Source of the DNA: Gracilinanus agilis
Lineage: Eukaryota
Assembly (NCBI RefSeq): GCF_016433145.1
Contig: NC_058134.1
Coordinates: 281,902,518 to 281,966,517 of the forward strand
Direction of reading: 5' to 3'
DNA length: 64,000 bases
The notes under the pieces were generated by a model. It saw only the letters and a list, made by a program, of their open reading frames with translations, was not told the origin of the DNA and did no database searches. Both the position numbers and the translations under genes were made by a program. Positions within the stretch are counted from its first letter, which is position 1, and every line of letters starts with the position of its first letter. Below, in pieces: positions 3,156-26,719 of this stretch.

Positions 3156-18146
<14,991 letters not shown>

Positions 18147-25176: not shown

Positions 25177-25926
25177 TGTAGCACCCACAGTCTCTGGAGC
25201 TCCCCTTTCAGACTTCCATTCTCACTAGCAGGACATCAGGGACCAGAGCTTAGTTACAACTGTCTCCTTGGAGTCTAGGAGTTAACTCTGAGGAGCTGGA
25301 GAGGGATCCTATGTCTAATGCTATTACTCACAGACCTCTTTGATTTGCTCCCACATTGATTACTCGTTGATAGCAAGTAGTCATCCAGACTTGATTAGCT
25401 TTTCGAAAGGATTTTTTACAAAGATCCTTTGGTAAGGACACTCAGTACCAATGATCCTTAAAATTCTGTGACATACTCTGCCACCAATTTAGCCAGGAGA
25501 AAGTGGGCTCAAGCTTAGAGATCACATTTGGCAAAGCTCCTGGAAGTCCTTTTGCTAGATAGAGTCTTTAATTTGTTTTCTGTAGCTATGAAGTGATTTT
25601 TCTTCTGGGCTCCTTACTGAATCTTGAATCTGCTTTTCCTCATAGTGTGGTCAGTCCTCAGCTCCCCAGTGCAGCTACTTACAACATTTCCCACTGTTCT
25701 GGGGACAACACTAAGTCTCTGATGGGAAGTCCAAATGTGAAGGTCATAAGGTCCTCCTCTGGCATAAGTAGGAGCTGGGGCCTGGCAGAGGCACAGGTCA
25801 AATAAGTCCCCCTTTCCTCTCCCCTTCTTCCATAGATTCCTCCTTTGGGCCTCGATGGTAGAGCTCTGCTCTAAGCTTCTGTGTGTTTGAATCTTCAGCC
25901 CAGAAAGTCTTAATATTTGATAGACA

Positions 25927-25986
25927 GCCCGGGCAACTCCGCCAAGGACGGTCCCACGCCTGGCTGAAAAAGGAGGAGGGTTGGGC
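25927..25986 (+). ncRNA. Putative type-P1 twister self-cleaving ribozyme
   Basis: C^AA-CTCC-GCC-AAGG-ACGG-T-CCC-ACGC-CTGG-CTGAAAAA-GGAG-G-A-GGG-TTGGGC. P2, P4, T1, T2 and the conserved catalytic A/G positions all map onto the twister consensus. Confidence 0.75.
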
Positions 25987-26403
25987 GCGAGGCTAGCAAC
26001 CTCACCCCGTAAAAATCTCACTTGCTATAGAAACTGCAACCTCATTAAACCAACAAAACCAATGATCGCCTAGTCTGGAAGATTGCTCTCCAACAGAGTC
26101 CATGATGCGTGCTGGCAAAAGCCAACAAACTCCAGGCCTACGTCAAATCTTGAACACCAGATGGCCTGAAAAGATCTCCAATACCAGACTCTGGGAAAGA
26201 ACAATTCAGTATCCCATCAGTCAGGACGTTATGAAAAAAAAAATATGGAACCCACCAGGGAGGAGAAAAATCAGAAGGCCAAAACAGACCTGGCAAAGAT
26301 ATGCCCAGTTGGTGGAAGTTGCCCAGAACAGAGTCCATTGGCGTGAGATGGTTGCGGCCCTATGCTCCTCTGGGAGTCAATAGGAATAATAAAATAATAA
26401 ATA
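25935..26403 (+). mobile_element. Young non-autonomous RTE-clade retroposon with 15-16 bp TSD
   Basis: TSD ATAGACAGCCCGGGCA at 25920-25935 and 26404-26419. Carries an RTE ORF C-terminal remnant (ILNTRWPEKISNTRLWERT...WNPPGRRK..RPKQTW...AQNRVHWREMVAALCS) and an (AAT)n-type tail. Confidence 0.85.
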
Positions 26404-26719
26404 ATAGACAGCCCGGGCAGTGTGGCCAAGTTTTCTTAACCAACTGGAATACATTTCCTAAGCAACACCTCTCTTGTTCATCCAGTGGTTTTCAGGGGCC
26501 TTTTGTACTCAGCCTGGCCCTTGAATGAATGAGTATGATGTGTTCCCTCCTAGTGAAGGTATCTGTCACTTACTTAAAGTATCCAGGCAGAACATCTTAT
26601 CACTTACTTAAAGTGAGATGAGAGAATTAAGGGATACACTCAATGTCCTCTTTACCCTTATAGACAAACACATGTTGGTCAATTTTTAAGAACAGGATGG
26701 GGTGGCGGGGGAGGGGAGA

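What the first reader, a model, noticed from the sequence alone, without database searches (positions are those of the whole stretch)
25927..25986. Twister ribozyme at the exact 5' end of a young marsupial RTE retroposon
Seen in sequence: 25934-25986 reads C^AA CTCC GCC AAGG ACGG T CCC ACGC CTGG CTGAAAAA GGAG G A GGG TTGGGC. This aligns position for position with the rice type-P1 twister (U^AA CACU GCC AAUG CCGG U CCC AAGC CCGG AUAAA AGUG G A GGG GGCGG, quoted from memory). P2 is CTCC 25937-40 with GGAG 25972-75 (4 WC pairs). P4 is CGG 25949-51 with CTG 25960-62 (one G.U, a plausible CpG decay from CCG). Pseudoknot T1 is CCC 25953-55 with GGG 25978-80, and T2 is GC 25941-42 with GC 25958-59. 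The general-acid A (25935), general-base G (25976) and conserved U25952/A25977 are present. The left TSD ends at 25934/25935, so the insertion begins within 1 nt of the predicted cleavage site. The host target GCCCGGG could rebuild P1 with TTGGGC (4 WC pairs, 2 G.U, 1 bulge). Established: twisters occur at the 5' end of RTE-clade Perere-3 in Schistosoma, HDV-like ribozymes process other non-LTR elements, and P1 is dispensable in mini-twister constructs. Inference: this family uses a twister to define its 5' end. I know of no twister ribozyme described in a mammalian genome, and a multi-copy family could scatter self-cleaving RNAs through marsupial transcripts.
Basis: partly seen in the sequence, partly recalled or inferred. 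Interest (0 to 1): 0.92.

Follow-up and report, generated by a model that had tools for sequence, protein, structure and literature searches.

The report
Twister-derived leader of marsupial RTE retroposons
The first ~50 bases of a high-copy RTE-type jumping element in this (reportedly marsupial) genome are a diverged copy of the twister self-cleaving RNA, and the family begins at the twister's cut site as in the Schistosoma element Perere-3, but whether this version still cuts is untested.

Summary
Bases 25935-25984 thread gaplessly onto the P3-less type-P1 twister. P2, both pseudoknots, the A.A pair and both catalytic bases are intact. The element (25935-26403) has a perfect 16-bp target-site duplication.

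Rfam twister-P1 scores it 27.6 bits. That is below the gathering score of 67.2, but canonical P3-less relatives also score only 40-55.

This is homology, not chance:
- The letters match Perere-3 twisters 34/37 outside P3 and L2.
- The first 81 nt are 80-84% identical to RTE 5' ends in metagenome contigs, one with a canonical twister, two with APE/RT ORFs downstream.
- In a genome-size contig set of the same organism, 43 of 56 listed 5' junctions fall at 25934/25935, the predicted cut site.

Activity is open. The family majority differs from the canonical core at P4 (one mismatch, one G.U) and at L4 (A to C). Nested folding puts 88% of the ensemble in a competing hairpin built from these same changes.

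My odds: about 0.5 that it still self-cleaves, 0.4 that it is a relic.

I found no paper linking twisters to marsupials. The scan noted a twister-like core elsewhere in this genome (s1-190006, unchecked).

The parts
25920..25935 (+). Left target-site duplication ATAGACAGCCCGGGC(A). The last A overlaps the element's first base.
   Evidence: Identical 16-mer at 26404-26419.
25935..26403 (+). Short, internally deleted RTE-derived retroposon: 5' leader, remnant of the ORF end, and an A/T-rich tail.
   Evidence: Summed contig depth jumps from 27.7 to 10^4-10^5 exactly over this span. Other copies continue differently at 26123, 26227 and 26303, for example with ...IKKRKWRWIG.
25934..25935 (+). Predicted twister cleavage site (C^A), which is also the family's 5' end.
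   Evidence: Rfam alignment. 36 contigs have junctions at 25935 and 7 at 25934, with unlike flanks (agreement 0.44-0.49). Only 2 fall at 25941 and 11 at 25944.
25935..25986 (+). P3-less type-P1 twister-like core. It holds A1/A2 25935-36; P2 25937-40 with 25972-75; T2 25941-42 with 25958-59; P4 25949-51 with 25960-62 (G.U at 25950/25961; A25948 x G25963 unpaired); T1 25953-55 with 25978-80; A25956.A25977; general-base G25976; and the P1 3' strand TTGGGC 25981-86.
   Evidence: Rfam RF03160 at 27.6 bits. Gapless alignment to canonical twisters. 34/37 letters shared with Sma-1-15 outside P3 and L2.
25941..25964 (+). Competing hairpin GCCAaGGaCG / CGCCUGGC. It uses the lineage-specific letters G25946, C25957, T25961 and C25964, and it excludes P4 and T2.
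   Evidence: ViennaRNA: -9.5 kcal/mol for the hairpin alone, 0.88 mean pair probability in the 50-mer, and P4 probability about 0. The canonical relative L014 has P4 at 0.8.
25987..26005 (+). Conserved 6-bp hairpin of the RTE leader, just 3' of the twister.
   Evidence: Kept in L008, L014, L004 and the fish loci L017/L018. 86% of cells are paired and 2 pairs change on both sides.
26102..26383 (+). 93-aa ORF remnant: the start ATG 117 nt after the twister, fused by deletions to the C-terminal end of an APE+RT protein.
   Evidence: phmmer gave 201 hits. The long ones carry Exo_endo_phos + RVT_1 + DUF6451, and the best is a Schistosoma margrebowiei protein. Distance.
26384..26403 (+). A/T-rich 3' tail (AATAATAAAATAATAAATA...).
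   Evidence: Sequence.
26404..26419 (+). Right target-site duplication.

Best explanation
The leader of this retroposon family descends from the twister ribozyme that RTE-clade elements of the Perere-3 type carry at their 5' end, and it most likely still works as one, perhaps slowly.

Proposed mechanism:
- The element has no shown promoter of its own and is transcribed as part of a longer host transcript (inferred).
- The twister fold forms from P2, a 3-bp P4 and the pseudoknots T1 and T2.
- A25935 acts as general acid and G25976 as general base.
- The RNA cuts itself between the flanking base (C25934 here) and A25935 (inferred).
- The cut RNA starts with AACUCC. An RTE reverse transcriptase supplied in trans copies it at a nicked target.
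- Each full-length copy therefore begins at A25935, directly after its target-site duplication (shown).
- The 5' strand of P1 is lost at every jump and is replaced by whatever the target offers.

Shown here: the homology, the intact catalytic and pseudoknot letters, and the coincidence of the family's 5' ends with the cut site. Not shown: cleavage itself.
For: 1. Fit to the family. Rfam twister-P1 aligns the full model with only the optional P3 missing. Canonical P3-less relatives also fall below the gathering score, at 40-55 bits.

2. Homology.
- 8/8, 13/16 and 13/13 letters are shared with the Schistosoma Perere-3 twister Sma-1-15, including the normally variable P2 (CUCC/GGAG) and the P1 3' strand UUGG.
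- The first 81 nt are 80-84% identical to L014 and L008. L014 has a canonical twister at 51 bits.
- L008 and L004 have APE/RT ORFs downstream. The L008 ORF is 59% identical to fish 'craniofacial development protein 2-like' proteins. By my own knowledge that is the usual automatic name for RTE/BovB endonuclease ORFs.

3. 5' ends. 43 of 56 listed junction contigs start at 25934/25935 with unrelated flanks.

4. Internal comparator. A sister subfamily with conserved sequence upstream has C at the general-acid place and a 3-nt insert before T2, and it does not end at the cut site.

5. Position of the changes. All six differences from L014 within the 46-nt core lie in L2, in P4, or at the one L4 base that is in neither pseudoknot. 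None lies in A1, A2, P2, T1, T2, A.A or the general base. McKinley et al. found such imperfections broadly tolerated (PMC11662667).

6. Spacing. The twister-to-ATG distance is 117 nt, against about 112 and 147 nt in Perere-3.
Against: - The Rfam score is far below gathering and would not stand alone genome-wide.
- The family majority has A.G at the base of P4, G.U inside a P4 of only 3 bp, and A to C at Osa A29. I map that base to L4 location 6 of McKinley et al.; the mapping is my inference. At that location changes lower the mean fraction cleaved from 0.76 to 0.42. A to U is tolerated, A to G is not, and A to C is not reported.
- The nested twister fold is worth only -6.7 kcal/mol, against -9.3 to -12.2 for canonical relatives.
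- A competing hairpin built from these same changes takes 88% of the ensemble, with P4 near 0.
- McKinley et al. link a predicted misfold of this kind to inactivity for the A6G variants.
- The 76-nt stretch does not fold better than shuffles, z = -0.16.
- No RNA 5' ends could be read. The runs are kept as contigs of unknown kind, and all junction contigs carry flank.
- Syngnathid fish copies of a related RTE keep the leader hairpin without a twister. The lineage may therefore be able to propagate without one.
Confidence: 0.5

Rival explanations
1. It is a twister relic. The leader descends from an RTE twister, but in the marsupial lineage it has been remodelled into a plain hairpin leader (25941-25964) and no longer cleaves, or cleaves too slowly to matter. 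The family's 5' end at A25935 is then inherited and kept by another mechanism, such as an internal promoter that starts at +1.
For: - Five of the six lineage-specific letters favour the competing hairpin over P4. Changing G25946, C25957 or T25961 singly back to the canonical letter collapses the hairpin's predicted probability from 0.88 to below 0.1. Only A25948 to C brings P4 back.
- P4 probability is about 0, against 0.8 in L014.
- There is a change at a highly conserved L4 base.
- Fish relatives lack the twister but keep the rest of the leader.
- Internal promoters that fix +1 are known in other LINEs (my own knowledge).
Against: - All catalytic and pseudoknot letters are intact in the family majority, even though the core differs from canonical relatives at 13% of positions.
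- The 5' end stayed exactly at the cut site. The one subfamily with a broken core has a different 5' end.
- Nested folding ignores T1, T2 and Mg2+.
- Twisters tolerate P4 defects and an A to U change at the same L4 base.
Confidence: 0.4
2. It is a chance resemblance: a G+C-rich leader that happens to match the twister descriptor.
For: The Rfam score is 27.6 bits, E 0.1 per 64-kb window over all families. By my extrapolation this is about one such hit per genome for this family.
Against: - Gapless 87% identity to canonical twisters that sit at the same place in related RTE leaders.
- Identical P2 and P1 3' letters to Perere-3 twisters.
- The hit lies within 0-1 nt of the family's 5' end.
Confidence: 0.03
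3. The motif is real, but the pile-up of 5' ends is an artefact of contig assembly or of the aligner.
For: Logan unitigs break at repeat borders, depth is no copy number, and only 56 of the junction contigs are listed.
Against: - A break caused by repeat borders is exactly what a shared family terminus produces.
- The flanks beyond 25935 are long (median 255 nt) and unlike each other.
- The window copy's own TSD puts the end at the same base.
Confidence: 0.05

Closest known systems
T-variant twister ribozymes at the 5' end of Perere-3 (RTE clade), Schistosoma mansoni (Liu et al. 2021, PMC8501958)
   Same: - The position is the same: the first bases of the element, with the TSD abutting the N^AA cut site.
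- The P1 5' strand is supplied by the target.
- The letters are the same in L1, P2 (CUCC/GGAG), T1, T2, GAGGG and the P1 3' strand UUGG.
- The distance to the ATG is similar (117 nt, against about 112 and 147 nt).
- The best protein match of the ORF remnant is a Schistosoma protein.
   Different: - There is no P3 stem-loop.
- P4 is 3 bp with a wobble and a terminal mismatch.
- L4 reads CCCACGC instead of CCCAAGC.
- The 3' strand of L2 is longer.
- The host is a mammal.
- The copy is a 469-bp non-coding deletion derivative.
- Activity was shown for Perere-3 in vitro and in reporters; here it is untested.
Osa-1-4, the P3-less type-P1 twister of rice (Liu et al. 2014; mutational map in Kobori & Yokobayashi 2016, PMC5113685)
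   Same: - The minimal architecture is the same: P1-P2-P4 with T1 and T2.
- All four positions that tolerate no substitution in Osa-1-4 (G13, G30, A46, G48) have the same base here, by my position mapping from the numbering.
   Different: P2, L2 and P1 have different letters. A29 is C here. Osa-1-4 is not known to be retrotransposon-borne.
Canonical P3-less twisters in metagenome contigs L001-L016. L014, L008 and L004 are RTE 5' ends.
   Same: - They align gaplessly over 58 nt.
- L014 and L008 are 80-84% identical over the first 81 nt, including the hairpin after the twister.
   Different: - They keep CCGG/CCGG in P4 and AAGC in L4, and score 40-55 bits. L004 and L008 have damaged 5' halves and score 27-29.
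- The source organisms are unknown.
HDV-like ribozymes at the 5' end of R2, RTE, baggins and L1Tc elements
   Same: The role is the same: a self-cleaving RNA frees the 5' end of a co-transcribed non-LTR element (PMC6765202).
   Different: The fold is unrelated. The HDV-like cut leaves the whole ribozyme on the element, whereas the twister loses its P1 5' strand.
Ttru-1-1, the dolphin twister (McKinley et al. 2024, PMC11662667)
   Same: It is a twister sequence in a mammalian genome assembly.
   Different: - It is a single P3-bearing sequence that differs from the wasp Nvi-1-37 by only four bases.
- No retrotransposon family or 5'-end role was reported for it.
- It was shown to be active in vitro; the element here was not tested.
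Marsupial RTE-dependent short retroposons (WALLSI1-3, RTE_MD-derived; Nilsson et al. 2012, PMC3403934)
   Same: They are high-copy non-autonomous elements moved by RTE in marsupial genomes.
   Different: I could not compare sequences because Repbase is not available here. Those descriptions concern the RTE-derived tails. No ribozyme is mentioned.

Membership tests
Twister ribozyme, type P1 (Rfam RF03160) | Score at or above the Rfam gathering threshold (67.2 bits) | tested here: not met
   27.6 bits. The threshold is also missed by canonical P3-less relatives at 40-55 bits, so it mainly penalises the absent optional P3.
Twister ribozyme, type P1 (Rfam RF03160) | P2 helix flanking the core | tested here: met
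   CUCC 25937-40 pairs with GGAG 25972-75, 4 Watson-Crick pairs.
Twister ribozyme, type P1 (Rfam RF03160) | P4 helix closing L4 | tested here: inconclusive
   Three pairs are possible (C-G, G.U, G-C) and the fourth is A x G. The pair next to the loop is intact. The predicted P4 probability is about 0 because of a competing hairpin.
Twister ribozyme, type P1 (Rfam RF03160) | Pseudoknot T1 (CCC of L4 with GGG of L1) plus the trans A.A pair | tested here: met
   25953-55 pairs with 25978-80. A25956 and A25977 are present.
Twister ribozyme, type P1 (Rfam RF03160) | Pseudoknot T2 (GC after P2 with GC of L4) | tested here: met
   25941-42 pairs with 25958-59.
Twister ribozyme, type P1 (Rfam RF03160) | Catalytic bases: A at +1 (general acid), A at +2, and G before the A of GAGGG (general base) | tested here: met
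   A25935, A25936 and G25976 are present. The family-level 5' end shows that both As belong to the element.
Twister ribozyme, type P1 (Rfam RF03160) | Conserved L4 letters UCCCAAGC | tested here: not met
   It reads UCCCACGC. The C at 25957 is the family majority. At this base A to U is tolerated and A to G is not, in natural twisters. A to C is unknown.
Twister ribozyme, type P1 (Rfam RF03160) | P1 helix | tested here: inconclusive
The 5' strand comes from the target. P1 is dispensable.
Twister ribozyme, type P1 (Rfam RF03160) | Site-specific self-cleavage | not testable with these tools
   This needs in vitro transcription or RNA end mapping. The available runs are contigs only.
RTE-clade non-LTR retrotransposon (Perere-3-like), non-autonomous derivative | Target-site duplication and an A/T-rich short-repeat tail | tested here: met
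   16-bp perfect TSD and the tail at 26384-26403.
RTE-clade non-LTR retrotransposon (Perere-3-like), non-autonomous derivative | Coding remnant related to a single APE+RT ORF | tested here: met
   The 93-aa remnant hits the C-terminal ends of 870-1240-aa proteins with Exo_endo_phos + RVT_1 + DUF6451. Other copies continue into ...IKKRKWRWIG. No formal clade assignment by a tree was made.
RTE-clade non-LTR retrotransposon (Perere-3-like), non-autonomous derivative | Leader homologous to leaders of elements with an RTE-type endonuclease ORF | tested here: met
   L008 is 84% identical over 77 nt, with an APE ORF downstream that is 59% identical to 'craniofacial development protein 2-like'. The fish loci L017 and L018 share bases 44-81 at 84-89%.

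The most novel reading that the evidence does not exclude
A mammalian (marsupial) genome carries on the order of ten thousand copies of a catalytically competent, P3-less twister with an unusual core (L4 CCCACGC, 3-bp wobble P4). The twister processes the 5' end of RTE-derived retroposons. It also cuts host pre-mRNAs wherever a copy lies in sense orientation inside a gene. The competing hairpin could act as an off-state that tunes cleavage.
Probability: 0.4. Interest if true: 0.8.

Novelty: new member of a known kind. Interest (0 to 1): 0.62.

Why it matters
- A biological role for twisters has been shown only for Schistosoma Perere-3. A homologous module heading a high-copy family in a mammal would show that the twister-RTE partnership is old, or travels with RTE when it moves between hosts.
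- In the searchable literature the only reported active mammalian twister is one dolphin sequence. A family of this size would change that picture.
- It would offer a natural series of core variants with known 5'-end outcomes: the canonical form, this variant, and a subfamily with a broken core and a different 5' end.
- If the sequence is active, sense-oriented intronic copies could cleave host transcripts.
- If it is a relic, it documents how a retrotransposon leader moves from a ribozyme to another way of defining its 5' end. The fish relatives that lack the twister fit that picture.

Tried and rejected
- I looked for other copies in the window with blastn and mismatch patterns. There are none, so no within-window covariation test was possible.
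- I searched the 93-aa ORF remnant with the search for homologous proteins and found no candidate. I searched the representatives library and found only hits at 55% identity or less. No marsupial full-length RTE could therefore be fetched, and the 5' end of the autonomous parent was not read.
- The metagenome pattern scan returned no marsupial copies, only canonical twisters of other organisms. These served as relatives.
- The second read-laying run at 1% share listed no 'other letters' at all, although one search lists several. That blank is unusable, so per-position variation inside the twister among copies could not be measured.
- I asked for RNA runs. The same four contig-only runs of unknown kind came back, so no read starts and no evidence for or against cleaved 5' ends.
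- The fish loci L017 and L018 and the Schistosoma margrebowiei locus L019 showed no twister in the matching element. L019 has one on the other strand plus hammerheads.
- Pfam on the short ORF pieces gave no hits.
- Numeric A29C activity was not available. The supplements of the mutational scans are not held, and Roth et al. 2014 is not held.
- I did not build a covariance model from the fetched relatives. They were retrieved with a pattern taken from this very sequence, so its score would be circular.
- The chance-match reading is rejected (see rivals).
- The Rfam hits to sR48, RNase P and miRNA families in the window are weak, chance-level matches.

Full report
**What is there**

The insertion 25935-26403 is flanked by a perfect 16-bp duplication, ATAGACAGCCCGGGCA, at 25920-25935 and 26404-26419. 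It ends in an A/T-rich tail.

Rfam's type-P1 twister model (RF03160) aligns 25930-25984 from its first to its last position. Only the optional P3 stem-loop is deleted. The score is 27.6 bits, E 0.0016 for 1 kb against 4227 families and 0.1 for the whole window.

The following are all in place:
- P2 (25937-40 with 25972-75)
- T2 (25941-42 with 25958-59)
- T1 (25953-55 with 25978-80)
- the A.A pair (25956, 25977)
- the general-acid A25935, A25936 and the general-base G25976

P4 has three possible pairs, one of them G.U, and a fourth position that is A x G.

**Is it more than chance?**

On the score alone, no. 27.6 bits is far below the gathering score of 67.2. By my extrapolation, one hit of this strength per genome is expected.

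The threshold is a poor yardstick here. A pattern scan of metagenome contigs fetched 16 loci with canonical P3-less twisters, and these score only 40-55 bits.

Those twisters align with the window copy without a single gap over 58 nt. The nine bases AACTCCGCC were not in my search pattern. They stand at the right distance in nearly all of the loci.

Against the Schistosoma Perere-3 twister Sma-1-15 printed in Liu et al. 2021 (PMC8501958), the copy shares 8/8, 13/16 and 13/13 letters in the three blocks outside P3 and L2. This includes P2 (CUCC/GGAG) and the P1 3' strand (UUGG), which vary freely among twisters in general, as the lower-case Rfam consensus shows.

**It is an RTE leader**

Three of the fetched loci share more than the twister.
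- L008 is 84% identical over 77 nt and L014 is 80% identical over 81 nt. The match runs on into a hairpin and an A-run.
- L008 and L004 have endonuclease and reverse-transcriptase ORFs downstream.
- The L008 ORF is 59% identical to fish proteins named 'craniofacial development protein 2-like'. By my own knowledge, that is the usual automatic name for RTE/BovB endonuclease ORFs.

The window element's own 93-aa ORF remnant (26102-26383) hits the C-terminal ends of 870-1240-aa proteins that carry Exo_endo_phos, RVT_1 and DUF6451. The best hit is from Schistosoma margrebowiei.

The ATG lies 117 nt after the twister. In Perere-3 the two main distances are about 112 and 147 nt.

**The family**

I laid the contigs of four public runs of the same organism on the region at 80% likeness.
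- In the genome-size run X1, summed depth jumps from 27.7 in the flanks to 10^4-10^5 inside the element. It peaks over 25965-25985. This roughly suggests copies on the order of 10^4, although the tool warns that depth is not a copy number.
- Between 25935 and 25989 no other letter reaches 5% of depth. The T at 25961 and the C at 25957 are therefore the family's majority letters, not decay of this copy.
- Elsewhere this copy differs from the majority at about a dozen places, mostly transitions.
- Most laid contigs are 90-95% like this copy.
- Other copies continue differently after 26123 and 26227 and before 26303, for instance into ...IKKRKWRWIG. This shows that the 469-bp unit is an internally deleted derivative of a longer RTE.

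**The 5' ends**

36 contigs of X1 break at 25935 and 7 break at 25934. Their upstream parts are long (median 255 nt) and unlike each other, with agreement 0.44-0.49. Only 2 contigs break at 25941 and 11 at 25944.

The family therefore begins with AACUCC, to the base where a twister would cut. That is the Perere-3 situation: the TSD abuts the N^AA site and the target supplies the 5' strand of P1.

The 25941 and 25944 classes share a conserved upstream sequence, ...CCCTTACCACTCCTGGGCT. This puts C at the general-acid place and adds three bases before T2. The subfamily with a broken core therefore does not end at the cut site. That is a useful internal comparator, although it rests on few contigs.

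**Does it still cut?**

In favour:
- All six differences from L014 within the 46-nt core lie in L2, in P4, or at the single L4 base that belongs to neither pseudoknot.
- None lies at the catalytic bases, in P2, T1 or T2, or in the A.A pair.
- McKinley et al. 2024 tested about 2,600 natural twisters. Imperfections in P1, P2 and P4 were tolerated except next to the loop, and any base was accepted at -1 (PMC11662667).
- In Osa-1-4 only G13, G30, A46 and G48 reject every substitution (PMC5113685). By my mapping, all four are kept here.

Against:
- I map the A to C change to Osa A29 and to L4 location 6 of McKinley et al. At that location changes lower the mean fraction cleaved from 0.76 to 0.42. 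A to U is harmless, A to G is nearly dead and predicted to misfold, and A to C is not reported.
- ViennaRNA gives the nested twister fold only -6.7 kcal/mol here, against -9.3 to -12.2 in canonical relatives.
- A competing hairpin, GCCAaGGaCG/CGCCUGGC at 25941-25964, is worth -9.5 kcal/mol on its own. It holds 88% of the ensemble while P4 is near zero. In L014, P4 is at 0.8.
- That hairpin is made by the lineage-specific letters. Changing G25946, C25957 or T25961 back singly collapses it. Only A25948 to C brings P4 back.
- Nested folding ignores the pseudoknots and Mg2+, so this is a warning and not a verdict.
- Two syngnathid fish copies of a related RTE keep the leader hairpin and the UTR but have no twister. 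The lineage may be able to manage without one.

**Verdict**

Descent from an RTE twister is close to certain. I put about 0.5 on the family majority still self-cleaving at a useful rate and defining the 5' end as in Perere-3. I put about 0.4 on a relic whose 5' end is now kept by other means. The remainder goes to artefacts.

No RNA evidence could be had. The only runs offered are contig sets of unknown kind, and all junction contigs carry flank.

**Known or new?**

The kind is known: a twister at the 5' end of an RTE-clade element (Liu et al. 2021). McKinley et al. 2024 report Ttru-1-1 from the bottlenose dolphin, a single sequence four bases from a wasp twister.

Full-text searches for twister together with marsupial, opossum or BovB found nothing relevant. 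Descriptions of marsupial RTE-dependent short retroposons do not mention a ribozyme (PMC3403934). The supplementary candidate tables of both twister surveys are not held, so a prior listing cannot be excluded.

The scan itself noted a 'twister-ribozyme-like core in a marsupial genome' on another piece of this genome (s1-190006). I could not read or check that note. I did not verify independently that the genome is marsupial.

Noticed in passing
L010:398-727 and 2563-2894; also L003, L006, L011, L015: Metagenome contigs of an unknown eukaryote carry two kinds of canonical P3-less twisters about 272 nt apart. One kind has a clean P1 (CUUUU/AAAAG); the other is preceded by UCCAGU. They score 45-55 bits in Rfam. 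This looks like twister-bearing tandem or retrozyme-like repeats.
   Followed up: partly
window 25987-26005; L008, L014, L004, L017:2888-2906, L018: A 6-bp hairpin directly after the twister is conserved across RTE leaders from the window, three metagenome contigs and two syngnathid fish. 86% of cells are paired and two pairs change on both sides. In the runs, 25990/26002 occur as A-U (this copy), G.U and G-C.
   Followed up: partly
L017:2850-2920 and L018:2820-2885: Fish (Hippocampus, Nerophis) RTE copies keep the leader hairpin and UTR of this RTE lineage. In place of the twister they have a short G-rich stretch (…GGTCCTCCAGGTTGGGGG…). There is no Rfam hit at E <= 0.1.
   Followed up: partly
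window 25941-25964: The lineage-specific letters of the marsupial leader jointly form a stable alternative hairpin that excludes P4 and T2. It could be a misfolding trap, an off-state or a new function.
   Followed up: partly
contigs of runs X1, X2, X4 laid at window 25941/25944: A sister subfamily has the conserved upstream sequence …CCCTTACCACTCCTGGGCT before AAGGACGG, so the twister remnant is internal and broken there. Another contig reads AAGGATGGTCCCTAGCCCGGATGAA, a variant with a UGG/CCG P4 and UAGC in L4.
   Followed up: no
L019 (Schistosoma margrebowiei contig): Seven hammerhead type-I hits and one twister-P1 hit (39.6 bits, minus strand) lie within 14.7 kb. This shows how densely schistosome DNA carries ribozyme-bearing repeats.
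   Followed up: no
window 10627-10862: Weak Rfam hits to Plasmodium RNase P and ciliate telomerase RNA occur on both strands of the same stretch. This is typical of low-complexity A/T-rich sequence and is not a gene.
   Followed up: no
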